Assembly: GCF_006345805.1 (NCBI RefSeq)
Contig: NW_021831856.1
Location: 2,695-66,694 of the forward strand
Direction of reading: 5' to 3'
Origin: Octopus sinensis
Lineage: Eukaryota
DNA: 64,000 bases
The notes below the pieces were generated by a model that had not been told where the DNA came from, searched no databases, and was given only the letters and a program-made list of their open reading frames with translations. Made by a program: the position numbers and the translations under genes. How positions within the stretch are numbered: the stretch's first letter is position 1; every line of letters starts with the position of its first letter. This document shows positions 3,531 to 60,700 of this stretch, piece by piece.

Positions 3531-6500
3531 ATATGTATATATTAAATTCAACTTACGTTGAATGTCAACAAAGTTTGCTTTAGAAGCGTTGAGATGTTTG
3601 AAAGATACAGATAAGGAAATAATTTTATTCTCAGACGCAGGATAATCCTATTAATATAGAATGAACAGGATAAACTATCGACATTATACAGAAAAATCTG
3701 TCGGTGTCCAGCCATGAGACTCGAATTCACATCCCTGTCAAGTGTCAAGTGCTTTACCGTTAAGCTAAACATCCCGAACGAGAATTAGGATATATAAATC
3801 TTGCTTTATAAGACGCTATATAAGAAAGGAAAAAATGTAAGGTAAATAAACAAACGACATAGCGTATACTGAATATAAAAACGAACGGGAGACAAACAGA
3901 AGATCCGTAATTCTTCATCAGTTATTGACCAATATTCAGTGTCGCACCTTCACCGATAAGACTGAGTGTTTCCCACTTGGCGCTACTCGCAAAAATAGGG
4001 TTTTCTTCTCGAGAATTAGAGACGAGAGCAAAGAAAACAAAGCAAAACAAGCAAAACGACACAGTGCATAAAGACATTCGGTATTCCTCATACAAGATGA
4101 GAAACGGCTAATTTTTATTCCAAGCGAACAAGGACAAGTGGAAAGACCGCGCTACGAAGCTTGTGAACAAACTCAAGCATCCGCTCCAACTGAACATATT
4201 TTGATTCTTTTCGGACGAGAAAAATCTCTGCCAGATACTTTCCATGTATCTTGGAATTCAATGGAGAAGTATATTATGTCACAGATTTTTAGTTACGGCA
4301 AGATGTTCAGAAAGCAACATTACGATCTTGTAATACAGGTGAATGACAATAAACTAAGCATGTATGTATGAATGTATATATATATATATATATGTTTGTG
4401 TGTGTGTGCGTGTACGTATGTATGTATGCATGCGATGCTCCAGCAGGACCGCAACCTCATGGCTAAAACAAGTAAAAGAGTACATATACTATATGTGTGT
4501 TTGGAAAGAAGATTTTACTTTCTTTGTCACTTGCGTATTGATTTTTTTCAATGCTACTTAATTAGCTGACAAACATAATTAAGTAACAATAAAAGACTAC
4601 AAAAGCAACAGGAAACTCAAATTTACTTACTAAGATACGATGCAGCTATGAATGACTAAAAGCATAAAGGCCACTGCATGAAATCTGTAGCTTATCCTAG
4701 TTCATACAATCCAGACAAAATCACAGTGATGCAATTTTTTGAGATCTTTATGATTTTAATTAGCCAAACATAGTTAGAGTGATAAGTGGGGTATTTAAAT
4801 ATATTAAATAAAAAATATAACCTGAAGAGGAATTTACGTTCTCCATGTTTAGACTCTTGAAGAATGTTTCGATGCTTAGGAATAGAAATAGCTGTTTATT
4901 GATTAATGCCAGAAATTGCGTACATCTAATAACTCACTTGATTTATCACATAGGAAGATGACATATAAGTCAGCTATAATATGTGTTACAATTGGCTGAG
5001 AATGCCGACACTTTACGGTTTCAATGCATTATCTCTGCGCTGGCATTAAAACACATACTGCTTTTACTGTGTGGTGCATAACAGAAATTCCAGTAAAGTT
5101 TAAAGGAGAATAATTCTCAAAAACGAAGAAAGTACTGATAATTGTATATATGTAGAATTGGAATTACAAAGCGCGCACACACACACACACACTTGATTAC
5201 ACTTGGTTTTGTAATCAGGCAAGTAGGCTCTCGATCATGAGTTTGAAGTGTGACAGAGCACTCGGTCGGATCAAATTCACTTAACAGTATCAAAAAGTAT
5301 GACCCCGAATCTTCATTTAACTATTTTGTGCTCGCTTTCAGTAAAGGTTCCAGGCAACTCAAAATAAATCATAGATTTAGGAATATTATGTACGGTAGAG
5401 AGAAGCCCACTGTCTTCCCATCGTCTCTCTCTCCCTTCCTCTCTCTTTCTCTTTCTCTTTCTCCTTCTCGTCCCACGAAGTCGAGTAAGTGTAAGTGAAA
5501 CAGAGGTATTTTCCTTACAGATCGACCTACTACTGCTTGTTTAACTGAATTTTTGAAGGTATTCTGCTGTTAGGGACACTGGGAAGCTCGTTATTTATAC
5601 GGGTCCTGAACCAAATCATTAGCCCTTTAAAGATACCTGTAATAATTCACTTATTTACATTATACATATAATTGTATCATATTAGCCTCTCACATTTTGT
5701 TACGTCTATGTAAGAGAAATAGCAGTGGTCATGCCTTTTTTGCTAGGCATTACTGAATGCAGACCGAATGCATGCAACAAAGTGAAAAGCCAACCAAGTG
5801 ATATTCCTCGGTCGTTGGATTAAGTTTCCTCCTTAGAAAATACAGTTCATCCGACGGCTTCTACACAGTTTCTGTCTATGGAATTTCGAAAGGTTTGGAT
5901 GCATCTGAGGCACAGGAGAAGTGTGATTAGAAAGCAAACTTACTAGACATACATACATATATACAGATATATAAACTTATGTACATATACACATGTGCGT
6001 GTATGTATGTATGTGCGAATGTATGTTTACAAGCCGAGAGATAAAATAAATGTTTAAGCCTTATATACAATGTATATCGTTTACCTAAAATACGAGTTTA
6101 TAATCGAACATAAATTTATATGGGGCTTTGCCTGCGTTGTGAACTTAAGTAGAAGGGAGGCAGTAAATGTTTAATTGCCAACAACTGTAACTTAAAGCCA
6201 TACAGTTTATGATATCAGTGTTGATTTAATCTACTGCAATGTTTGACATGTACTTATTTTATCAGGAACAAAATCAAAGTAGATCCCAATCGGATTTGAA
6301 CTTAAGAGAACTCAGAGACGAAACTTATAGATTGCAAGATACTTTGAATGCATACACATAGATGTAATAATTTGAAATGCAAGTTAATGAAAGAATCAGA
6401 GCTTATCATTGGAAATTAAATAACGAAAACAATTTCAGGTATCAAGAGAAAAATTTTTTTAAACCATTAGTATGTATGGATCAATACGGATTTTAACGAC

Positions 6501-6872
6501 AGATGAAAAACTAACTAGGTATGTGACAAAACAAAAAATAAACAAAGATTATGTTCAGTCAAATTGCTCTGTTTATAGACTCATGATTTGTATAAATTTG
6601 AACATATTTTAAAAGAAGTCTGTAATACGAAGGATAATTATAGGATTAAAACATTTAAAAATAATTTTAAGTGTTCCAGTCATGTGCTTTGCTGAAATTA
6701 TGTTGGGATCAGTTGTGGAATAAGCCTTGAGTGTATACAACCAAACGATCAACAAACACGGACAAGGAGACAAGAAGACGAGCTTCAAGCTGTCTCGCCC
6801 TCGTCAGCGTCTGCTTAAGTGACTAGCACCGAGAACAGGGTTGATGAGTGAAGTAAATGGTATCCATTAGCT

Positions 6873-7104
6873 AAGGCGGCGAGCTGACAGAAACGTTAGC
6901 ACGCCGGGCGAAATGCTTGGCGGTATTTCGTCTGCGTTACGTTGTGAGTTCAAATTCCGCCGAGGTCGACTTTGCCTTTCATCCTTTCGGAGTCGATAAA
7001 TTAAGTACCAGTTACACACTGGGGTCGATGTAATCGACTTAATACCTATGTCTGTCCTTGTTTGTTCCCTCTGTGTTTGGCCCCTTGTGGGTAATAAAAA
7101 AATA
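6873..7104 (+). mobile_element. tRNA-derived SINE, second family (GTCGACTTTGCCTTTCATCC central domain), with 17-bp target-site duplication
   Basis: A-box/B-box-like head (GAGCTGACAGAAACGTTAGC..GAGTTCAAATTCC). GGTATCCATTAGCTAAG occurs identically at 6859-6875 and 7105-7121. Confidence 0.85.
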
Positions 7105-7367
7105 GGTATCCATTAGCTAAGTAGAAAATGTTACGTAACCCACAGACTGTTAAGCTAATTTGTGCAGTGGTCCAGGCTTAGCAACTATAAACAATTCTCG
7201 TTAAGTCAGACACTGTATGAAAAGTAATGGATTCAATTTTGACATAAAAATATATTTCGGTATATGGATCATATTTTTGAAAAGTGTTCAAGCTATGTAT
7301 GATATAAAGAGAATATGTAACAGAACACCTTATGTAATGCATGCATTTCTACAACCCCTGCTTACAG

Positions 7368-7481
7368 ATTTAAACGACAGCTAGCTGATATGCGAGCGGC
7401 TGAGTATCGGGCACTGATGGCATTGTCCAGAAACATTACCTGCACCCAGGTAGCGTGTGGGTTAGTTGATATTGAAAAGAG
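7368..7481 (+). CDS. Neuropeptide precursor, peptide exon A: (x)FKR-QLADMRAAEYRALMALSRNITCTQVACGLVDIEK(S/R)
   Basis: Acceptor CCCCTGCTTACAG|A, donor AAGAG|GTATAG, 114 nt, phase 2-2, open frame. Dibasic KR followed by Gln, a C-x4-C pair, and clear paralogy to the exon at 8400. Confidence 0.8.
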
Positions 7482-7709
7482 GTATAGTAAGCTCTAGTTC
7501 AACCCCCAAACACTATCCTTTTACCTAGTCAAGACCTAAACCAAAGCCCTTTCTCACTTACCCGCCTCAAATCCTTAAGTAAATGGTCAATGCATTACAT
7601 TGTTAATATTTTTTTTCGTGTTTTGTGTTATACCAATAATTAATAACGTAGCAATGATAGATTCAATTTTTACAGTTCAAATTTTTGTACCATTTCATTC
7701 ATAAATATT

Positions 7710-7770
<61 letters not shown>

Positions 7771-8399
7771 TATATATGTATATTATATATAGTACTCTAC
7801 CTTCATACTGTGTGGGCTGAGGTTCACACTTCATAAGCCGCTAATATGGCTTGGTTAAACTTCTGATTTAGGTAGCTAAATAATTTATCACTCTTGTGTC
7901 GTAGTTAACACGGCTATACACATTACAGCAGACTCGGAGTTCAATTTCCATAGATCATTTAATGCATATAAATAGTATATGCATATACACAGATATTAAT
8001 GTATAAGTATATATATATGGCCATTTTACGCACACATACACGCATATGCACGTGTATATAGTAATATTTAAGTAAATATTTTGACCATTTGTTAAAGGAA
8101 TATCGTGTTACCCTACCAACCACCTCCATTTCCAGTAAAACTCCATTGCCTCTTCTATAGTTATCTTTATCCAATGATACCCGTTCCTCACATTTCACAT
8201 AGTTGGTCACATTATAATTGTTATGTTATTACAAAAAGCAATATTGATTTTATTTTGTTGTCATTACCTTTTACGTTGATATGTGCAATTTTCCTTCGCA
8301 TTCCTTCTCGTATTTATAACGTTTGTTTCTTATCGACCTGTCAAATTGTTCTGTCATTATTGTTGATGTCCATTTGTGTGTTGTTTTACCTGTTTACAG

Positions 8400-8519
8400 A
8401 TCGAAGCGCCAGACAGGCGATATTAAAACAGCTGAATACCAAGCATGGTTAGCACTTGGTGGCATTGTACCACCGGGTTGTGTCGAGGTTGCCTGTGGGG
8501 TAGTCGATGTACACGCCAG
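8400..8519 (+). CDS. Neuropeptide precursor, peptide exon B: (x)SKR-QTGDIKTAEYQAWLALGGIVPPGCVEVACGVVDVHA(S)
   Basis: Long pyrimidine tract ending TTTTACCTGTTTACAG|A, donor GCCAG|GTACAG, 120 nt, phase 2-2. KR-Gln start and C-x4-C. Matches exon A at 16 of 37 aligned positions by my hand alignment. Confidence 0.85.
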
Positions 8520-8711: not shown

Positions 8712-8772
<61 letters not shown>

Positions 8773-8990: not shown

Positions 8991-9043
<53 letters not shown>

Positions 9044-15354: not shown

Positions 15355-16455
15355 GTGAGTCTGTTTCTACGAGGTTCGTCAGTGTGTATTTCTTTGGAGT
15401 CTTTCTTAAATGAAATTTCTGATTTTACTTCAGCGGTAAACGGACATCCTTCGACCAGAGGATAGCCGAATTAGAGCTCTTAAGGCCATGAGCAAAGTGG
15501 CTGGTCATGGCCAATTTGACTTTGCTGAAATGTAGGTATTCGAAATGTTCTCTGTCATCAGCGCTACACTCATAGTCGTACTGTCCGTCAAGAAATCACA
15601 GTGTTCGTCTGTTGTCACACTGTGCCGTGCTGTGTGTTATACGTCACGGTGTGACTGTTTAATTCGTTAGGGTGTGTTGTTTTTTACTATACGTTTGGTA
15701 CAGTTTTATTCTTCGTCAAACACCGTGGATCATTACGTCACACCAAGATTGTTCTTTTGTACGTTATGTTCTATCATTTTTCATACGTATTAACGTGCTG
15801 TTCCTGATTCTACGTCACCTCATCTCGTATATTTTACGTCATACTGTATTGTTATTACGTATATTTTTCATCAAACGCTGTTTGCTACATTATGCCGAAG
15901 GTAATTCTCTGCGTTACGTTCATTTGTTCTTTCTTCGTCTCACTGCCGATCACTGTTCTATTGCACATCAAATTATTTCTATTACGTCCCGCCGTGCTGT
16001 ACATTATGTTTCTTCCACGTTCCGTCATGTTCATCATTGCACCTTCGTCACGCTATGATGATCACCTATTTTCCGTTGCATTGATATTGGATCAATTCTT
16101 TTCTCTCACGTCACGTTTGATGTCCCCGTCTGTATTCTACGTTACAATGTACACTGATCTATGTTGCGTCTTATCCTCACTCTATTACATTGATCTTTTG
16201 CACAATTTCACTTATGTTACTAAGTTACACTGTCTTATTCATCCTTCGTCATATCATACCTTTCATTTTTCTCTACACTATAGAATACTGTATCCTACTT
16301 CATGTTGTCTATGTAGATATATTTCTACGACGTTATGTTAATATGTTTATTCTAAGTACTGTCTCGCTGTCACAATTTCGTTTCGCCGTGTGCCGTTTCC
16401 AAGTATTTCACAGTCCTTTTCTGTTACGTCAAAAAATTGTATCATAACATCATGT

Positions 16456-16486
<31 letters not shown>

Positions 16487-17492
16487 CATACATTTGTATA
16501 TATGATGCAGCTTCACTGCGTTACACCTAACTGTTCACTATGCCACAACGTGGATCTTCTTTGTGTGATGTAAACTTGTTTTGTTCGGAGTATGAACTGA
16601 CTGTTAATTAGTTCCATATATTTTTGTTTTTCTGTTATTTTCCGGATTGTATTCAGTGCGTCACGTGTGACTTTTCTTTAAGTATCTTATTTATTCCACG
16701 TCGTCTAGTGATGTTTTTCATTCGTCAAGTCTCATATTTTATTTTTTTATCATGTCAATTTATATTACGTCATGTCCAAATGTTCCTTTCATGGTATGTA
16801 ATTCTCTTTAATTCTTTACTCTATGCATTTTGAAAATTTGATATTTCATTTCTGTTCTAAATAATCTTATTCATTCTACGACATGCCGTACTGTTTCTTT
16901 ACATGCTCCTCCCTTTTTTTTTCAATATCTTTTATTGTTTCACTGCGTCAAAGTTTGATTACATCGTGTTCACCAAGACAAAGGCATGTTTCTTCACATG
17001 TGACACATGGATTTATCCTTTTTTTGTTACTTTTAGAGCACCCTGTAAACGTACACCCTATCAGCATAGCATGGCTATGTATTCTATATCATACCGTGAT
17101 GCTATGTACATCTTGTCAAAACGGATTTAGCTTATCTCTAAATTACGCTATATTCACACGTTCTAAAGAGTGCCTTATGTGCTACATTCGCCACTCTTCC
17201 AATATTTCACCTTGCAGATGTTTACAATTAACGCACCCAACTCTAACGTCACAGTGCTTCAACATATGTGTACATACATGAATGCATACATAGATAGATA
17301 CATACATACATATATACGTACATACATATATATGTATAAATTAATACACGCGTGCATACGTAATTCATACAGACATACTTAGATGCATACATATGTAAAG
17401 ACATATATATATACATGCATAAATTCATACTTACAAACGCACATGCATATGTACAAACATGCGTACGTACTTACAGCCTCAACGTGTATATA

Positions 17493-18625
17493 CAGTTGCG
17501 GCCAAAATGTTCAGAACGGCATTGTTTTTGTCAGAAAAGTAGATATAATTTTTAATAGAACTTGTGTTATTTTCTATAATTTTCACAGACAATAAATACG
17601 ATATTAATTGTTATTGTCTGAGATTTTGGTGTAATTTGAGAGGATAATACAAAAGTTATGGATGATTTAGTGATTTACTGCCAAACCCACGGCGGCCAAG
17701 ATGATCAGAACGGTTGCTTTTACTTCATGTTTTACTATATTTAACCGGTGAACTCTAATGCTTTGAATTTGTTTACTCGACGGTTTATTTACTAAACATT
17801 AGTAAGAGTATCTGCAGTGTACTTTGTTAATATAATGCCACTTACTCCGTTACTAATTCGTCAGCAGATTATTAAGCTTCGAAAGAAGGATAATTTAAGT
17901 ATTGGGTCTATTGCAAAGATTGTTAACAAGTGAAAAAGTGTTGTTCACGGTATTCTTAAGGTCTACGATGATTGTGGTTCGTGTGAAGCAAGAAAGTCTA
18001 CAGGTAGGCCATGAAAAACGACCAACAGAGAAGATCGTGCTATGGTAAAGTTGGTTAAAAAGGACAGATTTAAAACTGCTGCTGCTGTTTCTCTGGAAAT
18101 GTGCATTGTACTGAAGAAAACTTTATTTCGAAAAACTGTGTGTTGTCGTTTAGTTGAACATGACCTACAAGCAAGAGCACCTGCAGTGAAGCCACTAATC
18201 AGCTCCAAGAATAAAAAATGTCGTCTTACCTTTGCAACCGAACATATGTTGTGGTCTCAAGAAAAATGGCAAACGGTGCATTTCCGGGATGAATCTAAAT
18301 TTGTTATTTGGGTCAGATGGGAAAAGGTACGTTTGTCAAAAAGTAGGTGAAAAATTGTCGCCTAAATGCCTTAAGACTAGTGTTAAATTCGGTGGAGGAA
18401 GTGTCATGGTTTGGGGGATGATATCTGGAGATGGTGTGGGCCCTTTGGTGCGATTACATGGAAAGGTAAATGCAGGAGTTTATAAACAACTTGTAAAAGA
18501 TCATGTCTTGCCTGTGCTGAGAAATTCAACTAAGCGATCACCCATATTCATGCAGGACAATGCCCCATGTCACAAGGCTAAGGTGGTCATGAACTTTCTC
18601 AAGGCTAAAAGATTATTGTTAATAT
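17493..18625 (+). mobile_element. 3'-truncated Tc1-family (DD34E-type) transposon with a decayed transposase
   Basis: TA|CAGTTGCGGCCAAAATGTTCAGAACG terminus. ORF from ATG 17835 with stops: MPLTP..GRP*KTT.REDR, F.DESKF, GGGSVMVWG, GPLVRLHGKVNA, FMQDNAPCHKAK. It breaks off before the WP..SPDLNPIE motif. Confidence 0.88.
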
Positions 18626-18880
18626 AGCCACTGAAAAGTGGCTATATTTTTAAATCGAATTCATTTTAAATCGAATTTATTTTAATAGTATCGATTTTAT
18701 CATTATCGATTTAAAGATATAGTCCCCAAATGCGCGGAGTCAGTTTAATGTTTCTTTAATTTATTGATTTTTAAAAAATATATATTATAGTATATTTAAT
18801 TTTTTCTATATATGGATAATGTCTTTCACAATCGAATTGCTTTATAGAAGATATTTCTCTTAATAATATATGTGCATGAA

Positions 18881-23140: not shown

Positions 23141-23246
23141 CGGCAAGAAAAAACGTAGTGACATATCAAGTGACGACATCAGACGTTCAACTCTGGCTCA
23201 AAGACTGATCCGATTTGCAGCAGAGAGACCTGCAAAGACTGAGTAA
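23141..23246 (+). CDS. Neuropeptide precursor, last coding exon C: (S)GKKKR-SDISSDDIRRSTLAQRLIRFAAERPAKTE*
   Basis: Acceptor TTTTACTTACGATTTTAG|C. The first base completes the AG left by exon A or B to give AGC (Ser), followed in frame by GGC AAG AAA AAA CGT (G-KKKR). Stop TAA at 23244-23246; a donor ATG|GTGAGG follows at 23258/23259. Confidence 0.8.
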
Positions 23247-25054: not shown

Positions 25055-27165
25055 GAAAATTTCAAAAAATTTTTGCAAAAATTTTCAAAAATTTTGGGGG
25101 AAAATTTTCAAAAACTTTGGGGAAAATTTTCAAAGATTTTTGGTGAAAATTTACAAAAATTTTGTAAACTTTCACCAAAAATTTTGGGGGAAAATTTTCA
25201 AAAATTTTTGAGGAAAATTTACAAAAATTTTTAGAGAAAATTTTCAAAAAATTTTCAAAAACAGATTACCGGAGATTCCCGGAAATTGCCGGATATGCCG
25301 GAATTTACCGGAAATTGCCGTAGATTGCCGGAAATCAACGGAAGTTGCCGGAGATTGGTGGAATAGCATTTTGGGAGATTTCCCAATAATGCAGGGAAAA
25401 GTTTTCAAAAATTTTTGGGGAAACATTTCAAAAATATTTCGGAAAATTTTGAACAAATTATGGGGAAAATTTTCAAAAATTTTTGGGGAATATTTTCAAA
25501 AATTTTCGGGGAAAACTTTGAAAAATTCTTTGGAAAAATTTTGGGGGAAAATGTTGAAAAGTTTTTGGGAAAAATTTTCAAAACGTTTCGGGGAAAATTT
25601 TCAAAAATTTTTAGCGGTAGTTGCCGAAGATTACCGGAGATATACTGAGCTTGCCAGAGATAGCCGGAGATTGCCGGAGATAGCCGGAGATAACCAAAGA
25701 TTGGCGGAATAGCATTTTTGGAGACTTCCCAATAATGAAGGGAAGAATTAAAAAAAATTTTGTGGGAAAATTCTGAAAAATTTTGTAAAATTTTTGGGGA
25801 AAATTTTGAAAAATTAAAAAAAATTTGGGGGAAAATTTTGAAAAATTTTTGCGAAAATTTTGAGGAAAATTTTTAACAATTTTTGGAAAAAATTTGAAAA
25901 ATTTCAGGGGAAAATTTTCAAAATTTTTCGAGGAATATTTGTTTCAGTTTTAGGGAAAATTTTAAAAAATTTTTGAGGAAAATTTTAGAAAAGTTTTTAG
26001 GGAAAATTTTCAAAAATTTTTGCGGTAATTGCCGAAGATTACCGGAGATATACTGAGCTTGCCAGAGATAGCCGGAGATTGCCGGAGATAGCCGGAGATA
26101 ACCGGAGATTGGCGGTATAGCATTTTTGGAGACTTCCCAATAATGAAGGAAAGAATTTTCAAAAATTTTTGGGGGAAAATTCTGAAAAATTTTGTAAAAC
26201 TTTTGCGGCAAATTTTGTAAAATTGTTGGGGAAAATTTTGAAAAATTTTTCGGAAAAATTAAAAAAAATATTTGGGAAAAATTTAGAAAAATTTTGGGGG
26301 CAAATTTTCAAAAATTTTTGCGAAAATTTTGAGGAAAATTTTTAACAATTTTTGGAAAAAATTTGAAAAATTTTGGGGGAAAATTTTCAAAAATTTTGGG
26401 GGAAAATTTTCAAAAATTTTTGAGGAAAATTTGTTTCATTTTTAGGGAAAATTTTAAAAAATTTTTGAGGAAAATTTTAGAAAAGTTTTTAGGGAAAATT
26501 TTCAAAAATTTTTGCGGTAATTGCCGAAGATTACCGGAGATATACTGAGCTTGCCAGAGATAGCCGGAGATTGCCGGAGATAGCCGGAGATAACCGGAGA
26601 TTGGCGGTATAGCATTTTTGGAGACTTCCCAATAATGAAGGAAAGAATTTTCAAAAATTTTTGGGGAAAATTCTGAAAAATTTTGTAAAACTTTTGCGGC
26701 AAATTTTGTAAAATTGTTGGGGAAAATTTTGAAAAATTTTTCGGAAAAATTAAAAAAAATATTTGGGAAAAATTTAGAAAAATTTTGGGGGCAAATTTTC
26801 AAAAATTTTTGCGAAAAATTTTGAAAAATCTTTGAGGAAAATTCTCAAAAATTCTTGCGAAAAATTTTTGGGAAAGGTATCAAAAATTTTTGAGGAAATT
26901 TTTAACAATTTTTGGGAAAAATTTGAAAAATTTTGGGGGAAAATTTTCAAAAATTTTTGAGGAAAATTTGTTTCATTTTTAGGGAAAATTTTCAAAAATT
27001 TTTGAGGAAAATTTACAAAAATTTTTAGAGAAAATTTTCAAAAATTTTTGCGGTAAATTAAAAAACATTTTTGTGGAAAATTACGGGAGATTGCCGGAAA
27101 TTGCCGGAGATTGCCGGAGATTGCCGGAGATTGCAGGAGATAGCTGGAGATTGGCGGAATATCAA
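25055..27165. repeat. A-tract satellite with 10-bp TTGCCGGAGA-type cassettes and 0.4-0.5 kb higher-order repeats
   Basis: AAAATTTT scaffold throughout. The cassette GCGGTA(A/G)TTGCCGAAGATTACCGGAGATATACTGAGC..GGAGACTTCCCAATAATGAAGG recurs near 25615, 26022 and 26514. Confidence 0.92.
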
Positions 27166-55453: not shown

Positions 55454-56105
55454 ACTTAAGAATAACTAAGTAACGGCGAGTGAACCGGGAGAAGCCCAAC
55501 GCCGAATCTCGTCGGCCGCGCCGGTCGTCGAGAGCTGTGGCGCAAGGGTCGTACACGGTCGATCGTTTCGCCCGGCTAGGTTCGGAGTCCCCTCGATCGG
55601 GGCTGCCCAGAGCGGGTGCCAGGCCCATTCGGAGCCGGCGGCGATCGGCGGTGTTCATCGGCCCGAGAGTCGGGTTGCTTGGGAACGCAGCCCAAAGCGG
55701 GTGGTAAGCTCCATCCAAGGCTAAATACGGGGACGAGTCCGATAGCCGACAAGTACCGCGAGGGAAAGTTGAAAAGAACTTTGGAGAGAGAGTTCAAGAG
55801 ACCGTGAAACCACCCAGGGGTAAACGGGTAGGACCGCTCACCGCGATCGCGAGGGGACTCAGTCCGCTGCTTCACGCCGAGGCGCCGTCGTCGTCGACGA
55901 ACGCGCCGGTGGCGGCCGCTCGTTCCGCGGGCAGTCGTCTGCCGTCTCGTCGGCGTTCGATTCCCGGGGCGCCGGCATCGGACGCACTTCCCCTCCGATC
56001 CGTCGTCGCGACCCGTTTCCCGTCGGGCCGGTAGGCGCGCGGCGTCCGCAGGTCGCAGACGAGAGCCCCGTCGCCGCCGCGCAAGCGGCGGTCGGTGGGA
56101 TCCAC
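55454..56105 (+). pseudogene. 28S: 28S rRNA pseudogene fragment (5' end, D1-D2 region)
   Basis: Conserved LSU blocks AGTAACGGCGAGTGAA, GAGTCGGGTTGCTTGGGAACGCAGCCC, GGTGGTAAGCTCCATCCAAGGCTAAATAC and ACAAGTACCGCGAGGGAAAGTTGAAAAGAACTTTGGAGAGAGAGTTCAAGAG. There is an internal deletion near the 5' end, and it stops just before the expected GACCCGTCTTGAAACACGGACC block. No 5.8S or 18S nearby. Confidence 0.9.
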
Positions 56106-56728
56106 GCGCTCTTCTCGACCGGGCCCGTCGCTTCCCGTTCCGCCACAGGCGACGCGGCGTCTCCGAAAGAGAGCGGTGCCGTGTCTGTCCCTTCTTCCCT
56201 GGACAGAACCGTGGCTTCAACTCCGGGTTTCGCTAGCGTTTCTGCAGCTTTTTTTTCCCTTCCCGGTATCACCCCGCCTTGGCGCGCGTCGTTTTCGTGG
56301 CGACCACCGTCATGGCACTCGCTCGTTGACCGCAGTCCGGACGCAGTTCGTCGCAGCCGTTTCGAAAGGATCGGGTGGAGGAAGCGACGACGACCACCGA
56401 CGCGTAGGGCGCCGGGCGAGTCTAAAAGCTGCAGCGGGCCCGCGCCAATCGCCGCTGCCCCTCTCGTCTGCCGACCTAGTCGCTGGCCTTCTTCGCCTTC
56501 TCCTCTTCCTCTTCCGCCCGGAACCGGCCCCACTTCAAATCGACCCGCACCGGAGCCCGTCCGCAGCATGACAATACACAGCCTAAGTTGATACCGACAA
56601 CTCTTGAAATTATAACTAGGAATATTCATTTTAAAATAAACACATGGGATACGGATGGATAGTTTTAAAAGAAATGTGTGAATGAAATATAAATGGGCAT
56701 ACAAACACAGTCACCAGCAGGTAAAGAG

Positions 56729-56761
<33 letters not shown>

Positions 56762-56762
<1 letters not shown>

Positions 56763-57154
56763 TTTTTATCTGTTTCAGTCATTTTGACTGCGGCCATGCT
56801 GGAGCACCGCCTTTAATCGAGCAACTCGACCCCGGGACTTATTCTTTGTAAGCCCAGTACTTATTCTATCGGTCTCTTTTGCCGAACCGCTAAGTGACGG
56901 GGACATAAACACACCAGCATCGGTTGTCAAGCAATGCTAGGGGAACAAACACAGACACACAAACATACACGCACATACATATATATATACATATATACGA
57001 CGGGCTTCTTTCAGTTTCCGTCTACCAAACCCACTCACAAGGCTTTGGTTGGCCCGAGGCTAAAGTAGAAAACACTTGCCCAAGGTGCCACGCAGTGGGA
57101 CTGAACCCGGAACCATGTGGTTGGTAAACAAGCTACTTACTACACAGCCACTCC
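56762..57154 (-). mobile_element. Near full-length tRNA/CORE-type SINE
   Basis: Reverse complement of the 42393 family. Confidence 0.9.
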
Positions 57155-57784
57155 CGCGCCGGTGTTAGGAAACACCTACCTTGCTAGAAATAAGGGCTAA
57201 ACCGCTATAATGCTGTAGTTAACGCACAGGAATTAAAACATATACAGTAACAGGGACCATAATCATCTGAAAAGGGCTGATTGAAAATTCATAATAATGA
57301 CGCGTCAGTTTCAGTGATTTCCGTTGCCTCATCAGTCAAGACCGCTCGATTGTTCGGCTCTTTTTAGATACGCCTATTAGTATTTACGATTTCGTCATCC
57401 AAATCATTGTTTGATGTAGCGATTCACTGTGTATATATACAATTAATATAAACATCAGTATGCAATCGATCGGTACTTTGGTCCATGTTAGTGTATGTTT
57501 TTATTCATGTGCGTTAACAACAACATTAGAGTGATTTAGCTCTTATTTCTAGCAATGTAGGTATTTCCTAACACCCTAGTCACATTTAGTGATATTTCTA
57601 ATTCTCCTTTTTGGTGAAATATTGCAAGCTGCTGTTTATATTAATTATATTTTTATATATATGTGTGTGTGTGTTTGTGTGTGTGTGTGTGGATAAATAA
57701 ATAAGTAGACAGACAGATAAAGATGAATGGCGGTGCCCCAGCATGGCCACAGCTCGTGAGCTGAAACTAGTTAAAATAAAAAAT

Positions 57785-60700
57785 AATTTTACTCAAAAAT
57801 TTACCGAAAATTTTCATAGAAAATTTACCCCAAAATTTAACGAAAATTTTCACCTAAAATTTTCCCCAAAGGCTTTTCGAAAATTTTACCCAAAAATTTT
57901 TTGAAAATTTATGCCGAAAATTTACCCAAAAATTTTACTAAAAATTTTCACGGAAAATTTTCCCCAAATGTTTTTCGAAAATTTTCCCCAAAAAGTTTTC
58001 CTAAATTTTCACCGAAAATTTTACGCAAAAATTTTTAGAAATTTTTGCCGAAAATTTTCCTAAAAATTTTTTGAAAATTTAACCAAAAAATTTTTCGAAA
58101 ATTTTCACAGAAAACTTTCCCCAAAAATTTTTCGAAAAATTTTGAACAAAATTCTTCACCGATTTTTGCCCCCCTGGCCTTCCATACTTTGTGATTTGGG
58201 CACCACTGGCCTTCCATAGTTTGTGATTTGGGCACCGCTGGCCTTCCATACTTTTTGATTTTGGCACCGCTGGCCTTCCATACTTTTTTATTTTGGCACA
58301 GCTGCCCTTCCATAATTTATGATTTGGGCACCGCTGGCCTTCATACTTTAAGATTTTGGCCACGCCGGCCTTCCATACTTTGTGATTTTGGCACCGCTGG
58401 CTTTCTGATTTTTCGAAAATTTTTCAAAAAATTTTTCCAAAAATGTTACCGGAAATTTTACCCAAAAATTTTTCGAAAATTTTCCCAAAAATTTTACGCA
58501 AATTTTCCCAAAAATTTTCCGAAAATTTTACCCAAAAATTTTTCGAAAATTTTCCCCAAGAATTTTTCGAAAATTTTCCCCAAAACTTTTTCGAAAATTT
58601 TCCCCAAAAATTTTTCGAAAATTTTCACCGAATATTTTACCCCAAAATTTTTCGAAAATTTTCACCGAATATTTTACCCAAAAATTTTTCGAAAATTTCC
58701 ACGAAAATTTTACTCAAAAGTCTTTCGAAAATTTTCACCGAATATTTTACCGGAAAATTTTTCGAAAATTTTCTCTGACCTAAAAATAGATTAATGTTAT
58801 GGCTAAAAATAGATTTTTAGGTGGCGTCTGCTGCTGCTGCTTTCTGTGTATATATAGAGTGAATTCTGGCTTACTACTAGAATCAAGATGCTTCATCATA
58901 CACGATACACCAGATTCTGCTTTACACTTAACAACTATGATGATGTCGTCGTTTGTAGATCTCAGCATATGGAGCATATTCGTTATGTGGTTTTTCGAAA
59001 GTTTTCACAGAAAATTTTACCCAAAAATTTTTCGAATATTTTCACCAAAAATCTTTCGAAAATTTTCACCTAAAATTTTACCCAGAAAAATAACTGAAAC
59101 ACGTGAAGAGTTAAAGAGAAAAAGAAGGAACACAAACACATATTTTCGAAAAATTTTGGGGTCAAATTTTCGGCAAAATTTTCGAAAAATTGTTGCTCAA
59201 AATTGTTGCTCAAATACACCAGATTCTGCTTAACACTTAACATCTATGACGATGTCGACGTTTATAGACCTTAGCATATTCGTTATATGATTTTTCGATA
59301 ATTTTCACCGAAAATTTTACCCAAAAATTTTTCGAAAATTTTCGCCGTAAATTTTCCCCCAAAATTTTTCGAAACTTTTCATCGGAAATTTTCTCGAAAA
59401 ATTTCTGGAAATTTTTGTCGAAAATTTTCCCAAAAATTTTTCGAAAATTTTCACCGAAAATTTTCCCGAAAGGTTTTTCGAAAATTTTCCCCCAAAATTT
59501 TTCGAAACTTTTCATCGCAAATTTTCTCGAAAATTTCTGGAAATTTTTGTCGAAAATTTTCCCAAAAATTTTACGAAAATTTTCACCGAAAATTTTCGGA
59601 AAGGTTTTTCGAAAATTTTCCCCCAAAATTTTTCGAAAATTTTCACCGAATATTTTACCAACAAATTTTTCGTGAATTTTCAATGAAAATTTTACTCAGA
59701 AATTTTCCGAAAATTTTACACAACAATTTTTTGAAAATTTTGCCGAAAAATTTACGAAAATTTTCACCGAAAATTTTACCCAAATTTAACTGAAAATTTA
59801 CCGAAAATTTTCATAGAAAATTTTACCCAAAAATTTTACGAAAATTTTCAACTAAAATTTTCCCCAAAGGCTTTTCGAAAATATTACCCAAAAATTTTTC
59901 GAAAATTAATGCCGAAAATTTACCCAAAATTTTACTAAAAATTTTCACGGAAAATTTTCCCCAAATGTTTTTCGAAAATTTTCCCCAAAAAGTTTTCCTA
60001 AATTTTCACCGAAAATTTTACGCAAAAATTTTTAGAAATTTTTGCCGAAAATTTTCCTAAAAATTTTTCGAAAATTTTCACTGAAAATTTTACCAAAAAA
60101 TTTTTCGAAAATTTTCACGAAAAATTTTCCCAAAAATTTTTCGAAAATTTTCACAGAAAACTTTCCCCAAAAATTTTTCGAAAAATTTTGAACAAAATTC
60201 TTCACCGATTTTTGCCCCCCTGGCCTTCCATACTTTGTGATTTGGGCACCACTGGCCTTCCATAGTTTGTGATTTGGGCACCGCTGGCCTTCCATACTTT
60301 TTGATTTTGGCACCGCTGGCCTTCCATACTTTTTTAATTTTGGCACAGCTGCCCTTCCATAATTTATGATTTTGGCACCGCTGGCCTTCCATACTTTAAG
60401 ATTTTGGCCACGCCGGCCTTCCATACTTTGTGATTTTGGCACCGCTGGCTTTCTGATTTTTCGAAAATTTTTCAAAAAAATTTTTCCAAAAATGTTACCG
60501 GAAATTTTACCCAAAATTTTTCGAAAATTTTCCCCAAAAATTTTACGCAAATTTTCCCAAAAATTTTCCGAAAATTTTACCCAAAAATTTTTCGAAAATT
60601 TTCCCCAAGAATTTTTCGAAAATTTTCCCCAAAACTTTTTCGAAAATTTTCCCCAAAAATTTTTCGAAAATTTTCACCGAATATTTTACCCAAAAATTTT

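What the first reader, a model, noticed from the sequence alone, without database searches (positions are those of the whole stretch)
7368..8519. Splice choice may act as an amidation switch between the two peptides
Seen: both exons end in a split AG codon. A joined to C gives ...DIEK-S-GKKKR (peptide A amidated). A joined to B gives ...DIEK-R-SKR-Q, because B begins with A. That creates a new KR site, so peptide A would be released shorter and unamidated while B takes the amide. B joined to C alone gives only amidated B. All three routes stay in frame. Inference: exon duplication gave a calcitonin/CGRP-like alternative-splicing system in which one split codon (AGC vs AGA) sets the C-terminal chemistry.
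Basis: inference. Interest (0 to 1): 0.8.

Follow-up and report, generated by a model that had tools for sequence, protein, structure and literature searches.

The report
Octopus PTH-like neuropeptide gene, cassette exons

Summary
Exon A (7368-7481) and exon B (8400-8519) are homologous, in-frame, phase-2 cassette exons with AG|GT borders. Exon C (23141-23246) begins C-GGC-AAG-AAA-AAA-CGT, which encodes the amidation and cleavage signal. The window is an unplaced scaffold of an Octopus sinensis-like genome.

The gene is a paralogous copy of the QSamide/PXXXamide ("iPTH") neuropeptide precursor, a protostome-wide family.
- There is a third homologous cassette, D' (15434-15531), which is frameshifted in this window.
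- Exon 1, with the signal peptide, lies off the contig.
- Single-cassette octopus transcripts (A+C, B+C, D+C) are already listed in Xie et al. 2020.

Differential splicing that gives amidated and non-amidated ("-like") peptide forms is described for the oyster orthologue.

Across about 60 family members, an alpha cassette joined to the tail exon always reads Ser-Gly-(K/R)n, so it is amidated. An alpha cassette joined to another cassette lacks the Gly, except in the gene-2 paralog, where D' itself opens with Gly. Splice-dependent amidation is therefore real and family-wide.

The specific A-to-B junction has no transcript support. The system also uses internal cassettes with a shared last exon, not calcitonin/CGRP-style alternative terminal exons. 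Verdict: a new member of a known kind, of modest interest.

The parts
7368..7481 (+). Cassette exon A. Alpha or 'QSamide' type, with a Cys-x4-Cys loop. Phase 2-2, 114 nt. It carries its own N-terminal FKR cleavage site and ends in the split codon AG|.
   Evidence: Identical in C5 and C11358, and 97% identical in O. bimaculoides. Present in RefSeq P0004 and P0006, and in O. bimaculoides 'transcript 1' of Xie et al. 2020.
7482..8399 (+). Intron between A and B, 918 nt, GT..AG, containing a (CA)n microsatellite. It is long enough that nothing steric prevents A and B from both being included.
   Evidence: Splice sites confirmed.
8400..8519 (+). Cassette exon B. Alpha or 'QSamide' type. Phase 2-2, 120 nt. 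It carries its own SKR cleavage site and ends in AG|.
   Evidence: 100% identical to O. bimaculoides exon B. The orthologous exon is present in Argonauta and in the Sepia-like cDNA L011. Present in P0002, P0003 and 'transcript 2'.
15434..15531 (+). Cassette exon D'. Beta or 'PXXXamide' type. It begins C GGT AAA CGG, giving S-GKR after A or B. In this window it is 98 nt rather than 99, because one A is missing between 15473 and 15474. That shifts the frame and creates an in-frame TGA at 15489-15491.
   Evidence: Intact at 99 nt in C11358, C5, O. bimaculoides and O. vulgaris.
23141..23246 (+). Common terminal coding exon C. Its first base, C, completes AG|C (Ser) or AT|C (Ile). It then encodes Gly-Lys-Lys-Lys-Arg, the amidation and cleavage signal, followed by the conserved C-terminal tail. 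Stop codon at 23244-23246.
   Evidence: 100% identical to P0006 residues 68-102.

Best explanation
The region is part of a paralogous copy ('gene 2', LOC118761766-like) of the octopus QSamide/PXXXamide (iPTH, invertebrate parathyroid-hormone-like) neuropeptide precursor gene.

Gene layout:
- Exon 1 encodes the signal peptide. It is not on this contig.
- Three homologous cassette exons follow. A and B are alpha type, with a Cys-x4-Cys loop. D' is beta type.
- Terminal exon C comes last.

How the design works:
- Every cassette is phase 2-2 and a multiple of 3 nt, so any combination stays in frame.
- Each cassette carries its own N-terminal x-Lys-Arg cleavage site and a Gln or Thr start.
- No cassette carries its own C-terminal signal. 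The C-terminal fate of a peptide is set by whatever exon is spliced after it.
- Joined to exon C, the peptide reads ...Ser/Ile-Gly-Lys-Lys-Lys-Arg, so it is cleaved and amidated.
- Joined to another cassette, it reads Arg/Ser-x-Lys-Arg with no Gly, so it is cleaved, trimmed and left as a free acid.
- Gene 2 is an exception. D' itself opens with Gly, so alpha + D' would still give an amidated alpha peptide.

What is shown and what is inferred:
- Shown here: exon anatomy, homology, conservation, family membership, and the junction pattern across the family.
- Shown by others: single-cassette octopus transcripts are listed, and the oyster orthologue has differential splicing with peptides detected by mass spectrometry.
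- Inferred: that this particular copy is expressed, the relative use of A and B, and any A+B transcript.

The likely receptor is a PTH-receptor orthologue. That pairing is shown in a beetle and not yet in any lophotrochozoan.
For: Exon anatomy and in-frame junctions.

Annotated octopod proteins containing these exons:
- P0006: exon 1 + A + C
- P0004: exon 1 + A + D + C
- P0003 and P0005: exon 1 + B + D + C
- P0002: exon 1 + B + C
- P0013: exon 1 + C

Other evidence:
- The cDNA-like contig L011 carries exon 1 + B + C.
- A profile search found 67 homologues across molluscs, annelids and brachiopods. Several pairs share one signal peptide but differ in cassettes, for example Babylonia isoforms X1 (alpha+C) and X2 (beta+C), Bradybaena P0011/P0072, Haliotis P0008/P0030 and scallop P0009/P0040.
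- Junction tabulation: alpha joined to the tail is always S-G-[KR]n. Alpha joined to beta lacks Gly, except in gene 2.
- Alpha and beta modules are homologous to each other (hhalign 95.6%, E = 1e-8).
- Family identity: supplements of PMC8557429 and PMC7224569 list the O. bimaculoides transcripts 1-3, Sepia, Lottia, Capitella, Lingula and Platynereis sequences that match my hits.
- The oyster orthologue has differential splicing with amide and '-like' forms.
- Exons are conserved above intron level between species.
Against: - No RNA data for this species or this copy could be examined.
- The window copy lacks exon 1, because the contig starts about 270 bp too late. Its D' exon has a frameshift. 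It could therefore be a haplotig with an assembly error, or a decaying duplicate.
- The octopus transcripts in Xie et al. are given only as sequences in a supplement, with no statement of read support.
- The only model containing the A-to-B junction (P0001) looks like an ab initio artefact.
- The receptor pairing in Lophotrochozoa is assumed, not shown (PMC8557429).
Confidence: 0.85

Rival explanations
1. A and B, and also D, are used strictly one per transcript. Each peptide is then always joined to exon C and always amidated. On this reading, splice choice selects which peptide is made and does not set its C-terminal chemistry, and there is no amidation switch between A and B.
For: - All three O. 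bimaculoides transcripts listed by Xie et al. are single-cassette.
- RefSeq P0006 is A+C, O. vulgaris P0002 is B+C, and the Sepia-like cDNA is B+C.
- No database protein other than P0001 contains the A-to-B junction.
Against: - RefSeq models P0003, P0004 and P0005 join an alpha cassette to D.
- Two-cassette transcripts are reported as found in the oyster. They are also common in gastropod and bivalve annotations.
- Both cassette lengths are multiples of 3 and the A-B intron is 918 nt, so neither frame nor spacing enforces mutual exclusion.
Confidence: 0.4
2. The window copy is not an independently functioning gene. It would instead be a redundant haplotig or mis-assembled duplicate of LOC118761766, or a decaying paralog, and its peculiarities would carry no biological meaning. 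Those peculiarities are the frameshift in D', the gene-1-type exon B and the missing exon 1.
For: - It is collinear with C11358 over 26.6 kb at 98.1% identity, and with C11597 over about 7 kb.
- All three are unplaced scaffolds.
- There is a single-base deletion in D'.
- Exon 1 lies beyond the contig start.
Against: - Exons A, B and C and all their splice sites are intact.
- O. vulgaris has an intact orthologous second locus on a chromosome (L014), so the paralog itself is real.
Confidence: 0.5
3. A+B+C transcripts are made in a regulated way, so that peptide A is released short and unamidated while B takes the amide.
For: - The junction reads ...DIEK-R-SKR-Q, which creates an R-S-K-R site.
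- The analogous alpha-to-alpha junction appears in annotated models from Lottia (P0014, RRKR) and Bradybaena (P0015).
- The analogous alpha-to-beta switch is documented in the oyster.
Against: - There is no transcript-level evidence for the A-B junction in any octopus.
- P0001 lacks a signal peptide and has unrelated flanking exons.
- Exon A is absent from Argonauta and Sepia, so any A/B switch would be a recent octopodid novelty.
Confidence: 0.2

Closest known systems
Crassostrea gigas Cragi-QSamide3/PXXXamide gene (Réalis-Doyelle et al. 2021, PMC8398477)
   Same: It belongs to the same family and has the same architecture, with alpha and beta cassette exons ahead of a shared tail exon. Differential splicing gives QSamide3 or PYKIamide alone, or 'QS3-like'+PYKIamide, or 'PYKI-like'+PALIamide. 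So the upstream peptide loses its amide when a second cassette is included. The paper reports peptides detected by mass spectrometry.
   Different: The oyster gene has one alpha and two beta cassettes. The octopus gene has two alpha cassettes (A and B) and one beta cassette. Octopus gene 2 also has a beta exon that opens with Gly.
Octopus bimaculoides iPTH transcripts 1-3 and Sepia officinalis PXXXamide gene 1 transcripts 1-2 (Xie et al. 2020, PMC7224569, S1 Table)
   Same: These are orthologous exons. Transcript 1 is exon 1 + A + C, transcript 2 is exon 1 + B + C, and transcript 3 is exon 1 + D + C. Exon B is 100% identical and exon A 97% identical to the window.
   Different: They come from the single O. 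bimaculoides locus, which corresponds to 'gene 1'. The window is the second paralog, found in O. sinensis and O. vulgaris, with changes in C (P for L, T for I) and in D'. The listing is supplementary and does not discuss splicing or amidation.
Tribolium castaneum iPTH and its PTH-receptor orthologues (Xie et al. 2020)
   Same: It is the same peptide family, of the beta or PXXXamide type. It has a signal peptide, a KR site, the peptide, and then G + basic residues. This is the only family member type with a demonstrated receptor.
   Different: The beetle example is a single peptide with no alpha cassette. No receptor has been tested for any mollusc peptide.
Vertebrate calcitonin/CGRP (CALCA) alternative splicing
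   Same: One gene yields different amidated peptide hormones through alternative exon use.
   Different: By established knowledge, CALCA chooses between alternative 3' exons with different poly(A) sites, and each of those exons carries its own amidation signal. Here the cassettes are internal and borrow the amidation signal from one shared terminal exon. No sequence similarity was found.

Membership tests
QSamide/PXXXamide (iPTH) neuropeptide precursors | Significant sequence homology to published family members | tested here: met
   A profile built from the octopod proteins retrieves Lingula (P0031), Capitella (P0016), Lottia (P0014), Platynereis (P0052) and others at E = 1e-31 to 1e-5. These same sequences are labelled QSGamide/iPTH in PMC8557429 and PMC7224569. 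O. bimaculoides transcripts 1-3 contain the orthologous exons.
QSamide/PXXXamide (iPTH) neuropeptide precursors | N-terminal signal peptide | tested here: inconclusive
   It is not in the window or in the rest of contig C8327. Exon 1 (MTRHILILSIVGMVLVSLVNARYIPEEELK) lies about 10.3 kb upstream of exon A in the near-identical contig C11358. That position falls just beyond the start of C8327.
QSamide/PXXXamide (iPTH) neuropeptide precursors | Dibasic cleavage site followed by a mature peptide with the conserved N-terminal motif x-x-[AS/G]-D-x-[RK]-x-A-E | tested here: met
   A reads FKR-QLADMRAAEY, B reads SKR-QTGDIKTAEY, and D' reads GKR-TSFDQRIAEL. Family consensus is given.
QSamide/PXXXamide (iPTH) neuropeptide precursors | [quoted passage not shown] | tested here: met
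   Exon C opens with GKKKR. Xie et al. state that this signal is strictly conserved.
QSamide/PXXXamide (iPTH) neuropeptide precursors | QSamide type: Cys-x4-Cys-Gly loop and a C-terminal Ser-amide | tested here: met
   A has CTQVACG...EKS-G and B has CVEVACG...HAS-G. Cys, Cys and Gly are invariant in 28 family members.
QSamide/PXXXamide (iPTH) neuropeptide precursors | PXXXamide type: Pro at position -4 from the amide | tested here: not met
   Octopus D ends ...DVDAI and D' ends ...DFAEI, with no Pro. Xie et al. say this Pro is only 'mildly conserved', so it is not a strict criterion.
QSamide/PXXXamide (iPTH) neuropeptide precursors | Differential splicing of the peptide cassettes | not testable with these tools
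   No RNA reads were available for this species. Indirect support comes from RefSeq models with different cassette sets, the Sepia-like cDNA, and the literature.
QSamide/PXXXamide (iPTH) neuropeptide precursors | Peptide activates a PTH-receptor orthologue | not testable with these tools
   This is shown only in Tribolium. It is stated to be unproven in Lophotrochozoa.
Calcitonin/CGRP-type splicing system | Alternative 3'-terminal exons, each with its own processing signal and poly(A) site | tested here: not met
   A, B and D' are internal cassettes with GT donors. All of them share the single terminal exon C, which carries the only Gly-basic signal and the stop codon.
Calcitonin/CGRP-type splicing system | Calcitonin-family peptide features: an N-terminal disulfide ring and sequence homology | tested here: not met
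   The Cys-x4-Cys loop lies in the C-terminal third of the peptide. There are no Pfam hits and no PDB peptide-hormone hits with either profile.
CRF / vertebrate PTH peptide families | Detectable sequence similarity to CRF or PTH domains | tested here: not met
   UniProt labels P0013 and the Capitella protein 'CRF domain-containing'. However, Pfam gives nothing at E <= 10 and the PDB profile searches find no CRF or PTH chains. Xie et al. report under 12% identity to PTH.

The most novel reading that the evidence does not exclude
After the iPTH gene duplicated in the O. vulgaris/O. sinensis lineage, the second copy rewired the ancestral rule that the last cassette takes the amide.
- Its beta exon D' changed its first full codon from GTT (Val) to GGT (Gly). 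Alpha peptides would then stay amidated even in two-cassette transcripts.
- Its peptide exons accumulated almost only amino-acid-changing substitutions: B 6:0, A 4:0, D 12:3.
- Co-inclusion of the octopodid-specific exon A with B would yield a furin-site-terminated, non-amidated A.
Together these would give a regulated set of ligands with different C-terminal chemistry for PTH-type receptors.
Probability: 0.15. Interest if true: 0.5.

Novelty: new member of a known kind. Interest (0 to 1): 0.3.

Why it matters
The result shows that a reader working from raw DNA alone recovered a real design rule of a neuropeptide gene. The cassette exons carry only the N-terminal cleavage site, and they borrow the amidation signal from whatever exon follows. 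The rule holds across molluscs, annelids and brachiopods.

For cephalopod neurobiology, the result supplies exact exon coordinates for the octopus iPTH-like gene. It also shows that a second, fast-evolving paralog exists in O. sinensis and O. vulgaris. It identifies the peptides to synthesise for testing on octopus PTH-type receptors, whose ligands have not yet been demonstrated in any lophotrochozoan. It does not open a new class of mechanism.

Tried and rejected
- Aplysia R15 neuroactive polyprotein, the classic alternatively spliced molluscan neuropeptide gene. Rejected: the Aplysia homologue of this family is the 'uncharacterized' LOC106011723, not R15.
- PDF/cerebrin, on the resemblance of ...LVDIEKS to cerebrin's ...LPDLEKI recalled from memory. 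Dropped once the true family was found.
- CRF/DH44/ELH, following UniProt's 'CRF domain-containing' label. No Pfam or PDB support.
- Calcitonin. The loop is in the wrong place and there is no homology.
- Full-text literature searches for peptide strings, LOC numbers and accession numbers found nothing. The sequences occur only in supplements, where they were then found.
- The scallop neuropeptidome paper and its supplements do not contain the family.
- I looked for conserved intronic blocks between Octopus and Argonauta that might act as docking or selector sites for mutually exclusive splicing. Only exons 1, B, D and C are conserved and collinear. The other matches are dispersed repeats. I made no dedicated search for RNA pairing.
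- ARAGORN found no tRNA-like element in the repeat just upstream of exon A.
- A structure prediction was not run, because it would not bear on the question.

Full report
**1. What is in the sequence**

The window is G000:C8327:2695-66694, an unplaced 66.7-kb scaffold of a 2.72-Gb, 13,516-contig octopus assembly. Low GC content and abundant microsatellites fit this. RefSeq proteins named Octopus sinensis match it exactly.

The exons are as follows:
- Exon A, 7368-7481 (114 nt): ...cttacag|A TTT AAA CGA CAG ... GAA AAG AG|gtatag.
- Exon B, 8400-8519 (120 nt): ...tttacag|A TCG AAG CGC CAG ... CAC GCC AG|gtacag.
- Exon C, 23141-23246: ttttag|C GGC AAG AAA AAA CGT ... GAG TAA.

- A+C gives ...DIEK-S-GKKKR.
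- A+B gives ...DIEK-R-SKR-Q.
- B+C gives ...VDVHA-S-GKKKR.

All three are in frame.

**2.

*A third cassette.* A third homologous cassette, D', lies at 15434-15531: cttcag|C GGT AAA CGG ACA ... GAA AT|gtaggt. It encodes (S)GKR-TSFDQRIAEL.... In the window it is 98 nt. In every other octopus locus examined it is 99 nt. One A is missing between 15473 and 15474, which shifts the frame into a TGA at 15489-15491. This could be a real lesion or an assembly error.

*Exon 1 is off the contig.* Exon 1 (MTRHILILSIVGMVLVSLVNARYIPEEEL + split codon) is absent from the window and from the 2.7 kb of contig ahead of it. In the near-identical contig C11358 it lies 10.3 kb upstream of exon A. That position falls just off the start of C8327.

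*Two loci in the genome.*
- 'Gene 1' is on chromosome-scale contig C5 (LOC115211866). It is orthologous to the single O. bimaculoides locus LOC106873782.
- 'Gene 2' (LOC118761766) is represented by the unplaced contigs C11358, C8327 (the window) and, in part, C11597.

The window is collinear with C11358 at 98.1% identity over 26.6 kb. It is collinear with the O. vulgaris second locus (L014) at about 97.6%. Identity to C5 is 90-97.7%.

**3. Gene logic**

Exon 1 ends in phase 2...TTG AG|gt in gene 1 and ...TTG AA|gt in gene 2. A, B and D are all phase 2-2 and multiples of three, so any subset stays in frame.

Each cassette starts with the last base of a split codon followed by x-Lys-Arg. It therefore brings its own N-terminal cleavage site. 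None carries a C-terminal signal. The only Gly-basic amidation signal is the first full codon set of exon C. In gene 2, D' also opens with one (GGT AAA CGG). Gene 1 has GTT AAA CGG (S-VKR) at this position and Argonauta has A ACT AAA AGG (R-TKR).

So the split AG codon yields Ser before C or D, and Arg before A or B. What decides amidation is the Gly codon that follows. The Arg made at an A-to-B junction completes an R-S-K-R site.

The donor sites of A (GTATAG) and B (GTACAG) match the GTRAGT consensus at only three of six intron positions. The exon 1 donor (GTAAGC) matches at five of six. These weak donors are conserved in all five octopus loci. By general knowledge this is typical of regulated exons.

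**4. Conservation**

Between O. sinensis gene 1 and O. bimaculoides, exon B is 120/120 identical, A 111/114, D 97/99 and C 102/106. The 300-nt flanking introns differ by 4-12%.

Between Octopus and Argonauta, the only collinear conserved blocks are exons 1, B, D and C. Argonauta has no exon A. The published Sepia transcripts contain only one alpha and one beta type. Exon A is therefore an octopodid-specific duplicate of the alpha cassette. The alpha/beta pair is far older.

**5. Family**

Pfam finds nothing. A profile built from five octopod proteins, searched against 1.84 billion representative proteins, found 67 homologues. They come from gastropods, bivalves, a chiton, an annelid and a brachiopod.

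Two module types recur:
- Alpha: KR-QSADVRTAEYLAWIALGG..C....ACGVVDV..S
- Beta: RR-SSSDQRIAELQALMAL....AHGQFDP..I

The two are homologous to each other (hhalign 95.6%, E = 1e-8).

Full-text string searches found no paper. The sequences do occur in supplements. Thiel et al. 2021 (PMC8557429) label them QSGamide/iPTH. Their file reproduces 'Octopus bimaculoides transcript 1/2/3' from Xie et al. 2020, which are exon 1 + A + C, exon 1 + B + C and exon 1 + D + C. Xie et al. 2020 (PMC7224569) give the same sequences in their S1 Table. They also show that the Tribolium family member activates PTH-receptor orthologues.

Réalis-Doyelle et al. [quoted passage not shown] It gives Cragi-QSamide3, Cragi-PYKIamide, 'PYKI-like'/PALIamide and 'QS3-like'/PYKIamide transcripts. 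They report that all mature peptides except Cragi-QSamide2 were detected by mass spectrometry.

**6. The amidation rule across the family**

I tabulated 61 alpha modules and 42 beta modules.
- Every alpha module followed directly by the tail reads S-G-[KR]2-4.
- Every alpha module followed by another cassette reads R-x-[KR]-R, S-VKR, S-LRVRR or S-SRTKR, with no Gly. The exception is the gene-2 paralog, where D' begins with Gly.

Pairs with identical signal peptides but different cassette sets show that these are isoforms of one gene. Examples are Babylonia LOC143286572 X1/X2, Bradybaena P0011/P0072 and P0073/P0087, Haliotis P0008/P0030, and scallop P0009/P0022/P0040.

It is already implicit in the oyster '-like' forms.

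**7. What remains unsupported**

The A-to-B junction occurs only in O. vulgaris model CAI9723493.1 (P0001). That model starts with an ORF found at window 6472-6522 and ends with one at 17038-17127. It has no signal peptide. I regard it as unreliable.

RefSeq does join alpha cassettes to D, in P0003, P0004 and P0005. In gene 1, then, the likely switch is D inclusion against D skipping: ...VHAS-VKR versus ...VHAS-GKKKR.

No RNA reads could be examined for any octopus. Isoform usage by this copy is inferred.

**8. Comparison with calcitonin/CGRP**

The resemblance is limited to one gene giving several amidated peptides through splicing. By established knowledge, CALCA uses alternative terminal exons and poly(A) sites, and each exon has its own signal. 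Here internal cassettes share one terminal exon. No sequence relation was found.

**9. Verdict**

This is a new member, a paralogous copy, of a known neuropeptide gene family whose differential splicing is published. Interest is modest.

The small new points are:
- the octopodid-specific alpha duplication;
- the Gly at the start of D' in gene 2;
- the excess of amino-acid-changing substitutions in the gene-2 cassettes;
- the gene-1-type patch over exon B in this window.

Noticed in passing
window 15434-15531 (deletion between 15473 and 15474; TGA at 15489-15491): Cassette exon D' is 98 nt here and 99 nt in C11358, C5, O. bimaculoides and O. vulgaris. A single A is missing (GAATTA-GAGCTC against GAATTAAGAGCTC), which gives a frameshift and a premature stop. 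I could not tell whether this is a real lesion or an assembly error.
   Followed up: partly
window 8392-8512 (exon B and 8 nt of the upstream intron): All 7 sites that distinguish gene 1 (C5) from gene 2 (C11358) are of the gene-1 type here, while the flanking sites at 8338 and 8591 are of the gene-2 type. Exon B differs from C11358 at 6 of 120 positions, whereas the 600 nt of flanks differ at only 3. This suggests a short gene-conversion tract, or a retained polymorphism, over the peptide exon.
   Followed up: partly
Exons A, B and D of gene 2 (C11358 via L019-L023; O. vulgaris L014) compared with gene 1 (C5 via L015-L018): Differences between the paralogs in the peptide exons are almost all amino-acid-changing. 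Exon B has 6 nonsynonymous and 0 synonymous changes, exon A in O. vulgaris has 4 and 0, and exon D has about 12 and 3. Neighbouring introns differ by only 1-6%. This suggests diversifying selection or relaxed constraint after the duplication, but the counts are too small for a test.
   Followed up: partly
L014 18668-18766, C11358 D exon, and window 15434-15442: In gene 2 the first full codon of the beta exon is GGT (Gly). Gene 1 and O. bimaculoides have GTT (Val), and Argonauta has ACT (Thr). An alpha peptide joined to D' would therefore read S-GKR and would still be amidated.
   Followed up: partly
P0013 (UniProt A0A0L8GZR7) and Capitella R7TDY4: UniProt labels the exon 1 + C product (64 aa, no peptide cassette) and the Capitella precursor 'Corticotropin-releasing factor domain-containing'. 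The label therefore seems to attach to the conserved C-terminal tail (...RRSILAQKLIQFAAERLAKTE). Pfam and PDB searches give no support. Why the tail is conserved is unexplained.
   Followed up: partly
window 18015-18627 (+): A Tc1/mariner-type transposase remnant lies in the D'-C intron. It matches HTH_Tnp_Tc3_2 at E = 6e-16 and has a weak DDE_3 match, split over two frames.
   Followed up: partly
window 25055-27082: An A/T-rich satellite lies about 2 kb downstream of exon C. Its basic unit is about 23 bp (GAAAATTTTCAAAAATTTTTGGG), with a higher-order period of 492 bp (2.4 copies, 90% matches). It produces long spurious ORFs on both strands.
   Followed up: partly
window 7713-7768, 8718-8765, 8997-9042: There is a (CA)n microsatellite inside the A-B intron and (TA)n microsatellites just downstream of exon B. 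They account for most of the indel differences between the gene copies.
   Followed up: no
window 6472-6522 and 17038-17127: These are short ORFs that the O. vulgaris annotation (CAI9723493.1) uses as the first and last coding exons of a model joining A, B and D. They have no relation to the neuropeptide family and are probably prediction artefacts.
   Followed up: partly
window 6859-6875 and 7106-7122: The 17-mer ggtatccattagctaag occurs twice, about 250 bp apart, just upstream of exon A, which may mark a short interspersed repeat. ARAGORN finds no tRNA-like gene there.
   Followed up: partly
window about 56000-58000: GC content rises to 0.45 against a background of about 0.33, and the stretch has Arg/Gly-rich open frames on both strands. 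I did not examine it.
   Followed up: no
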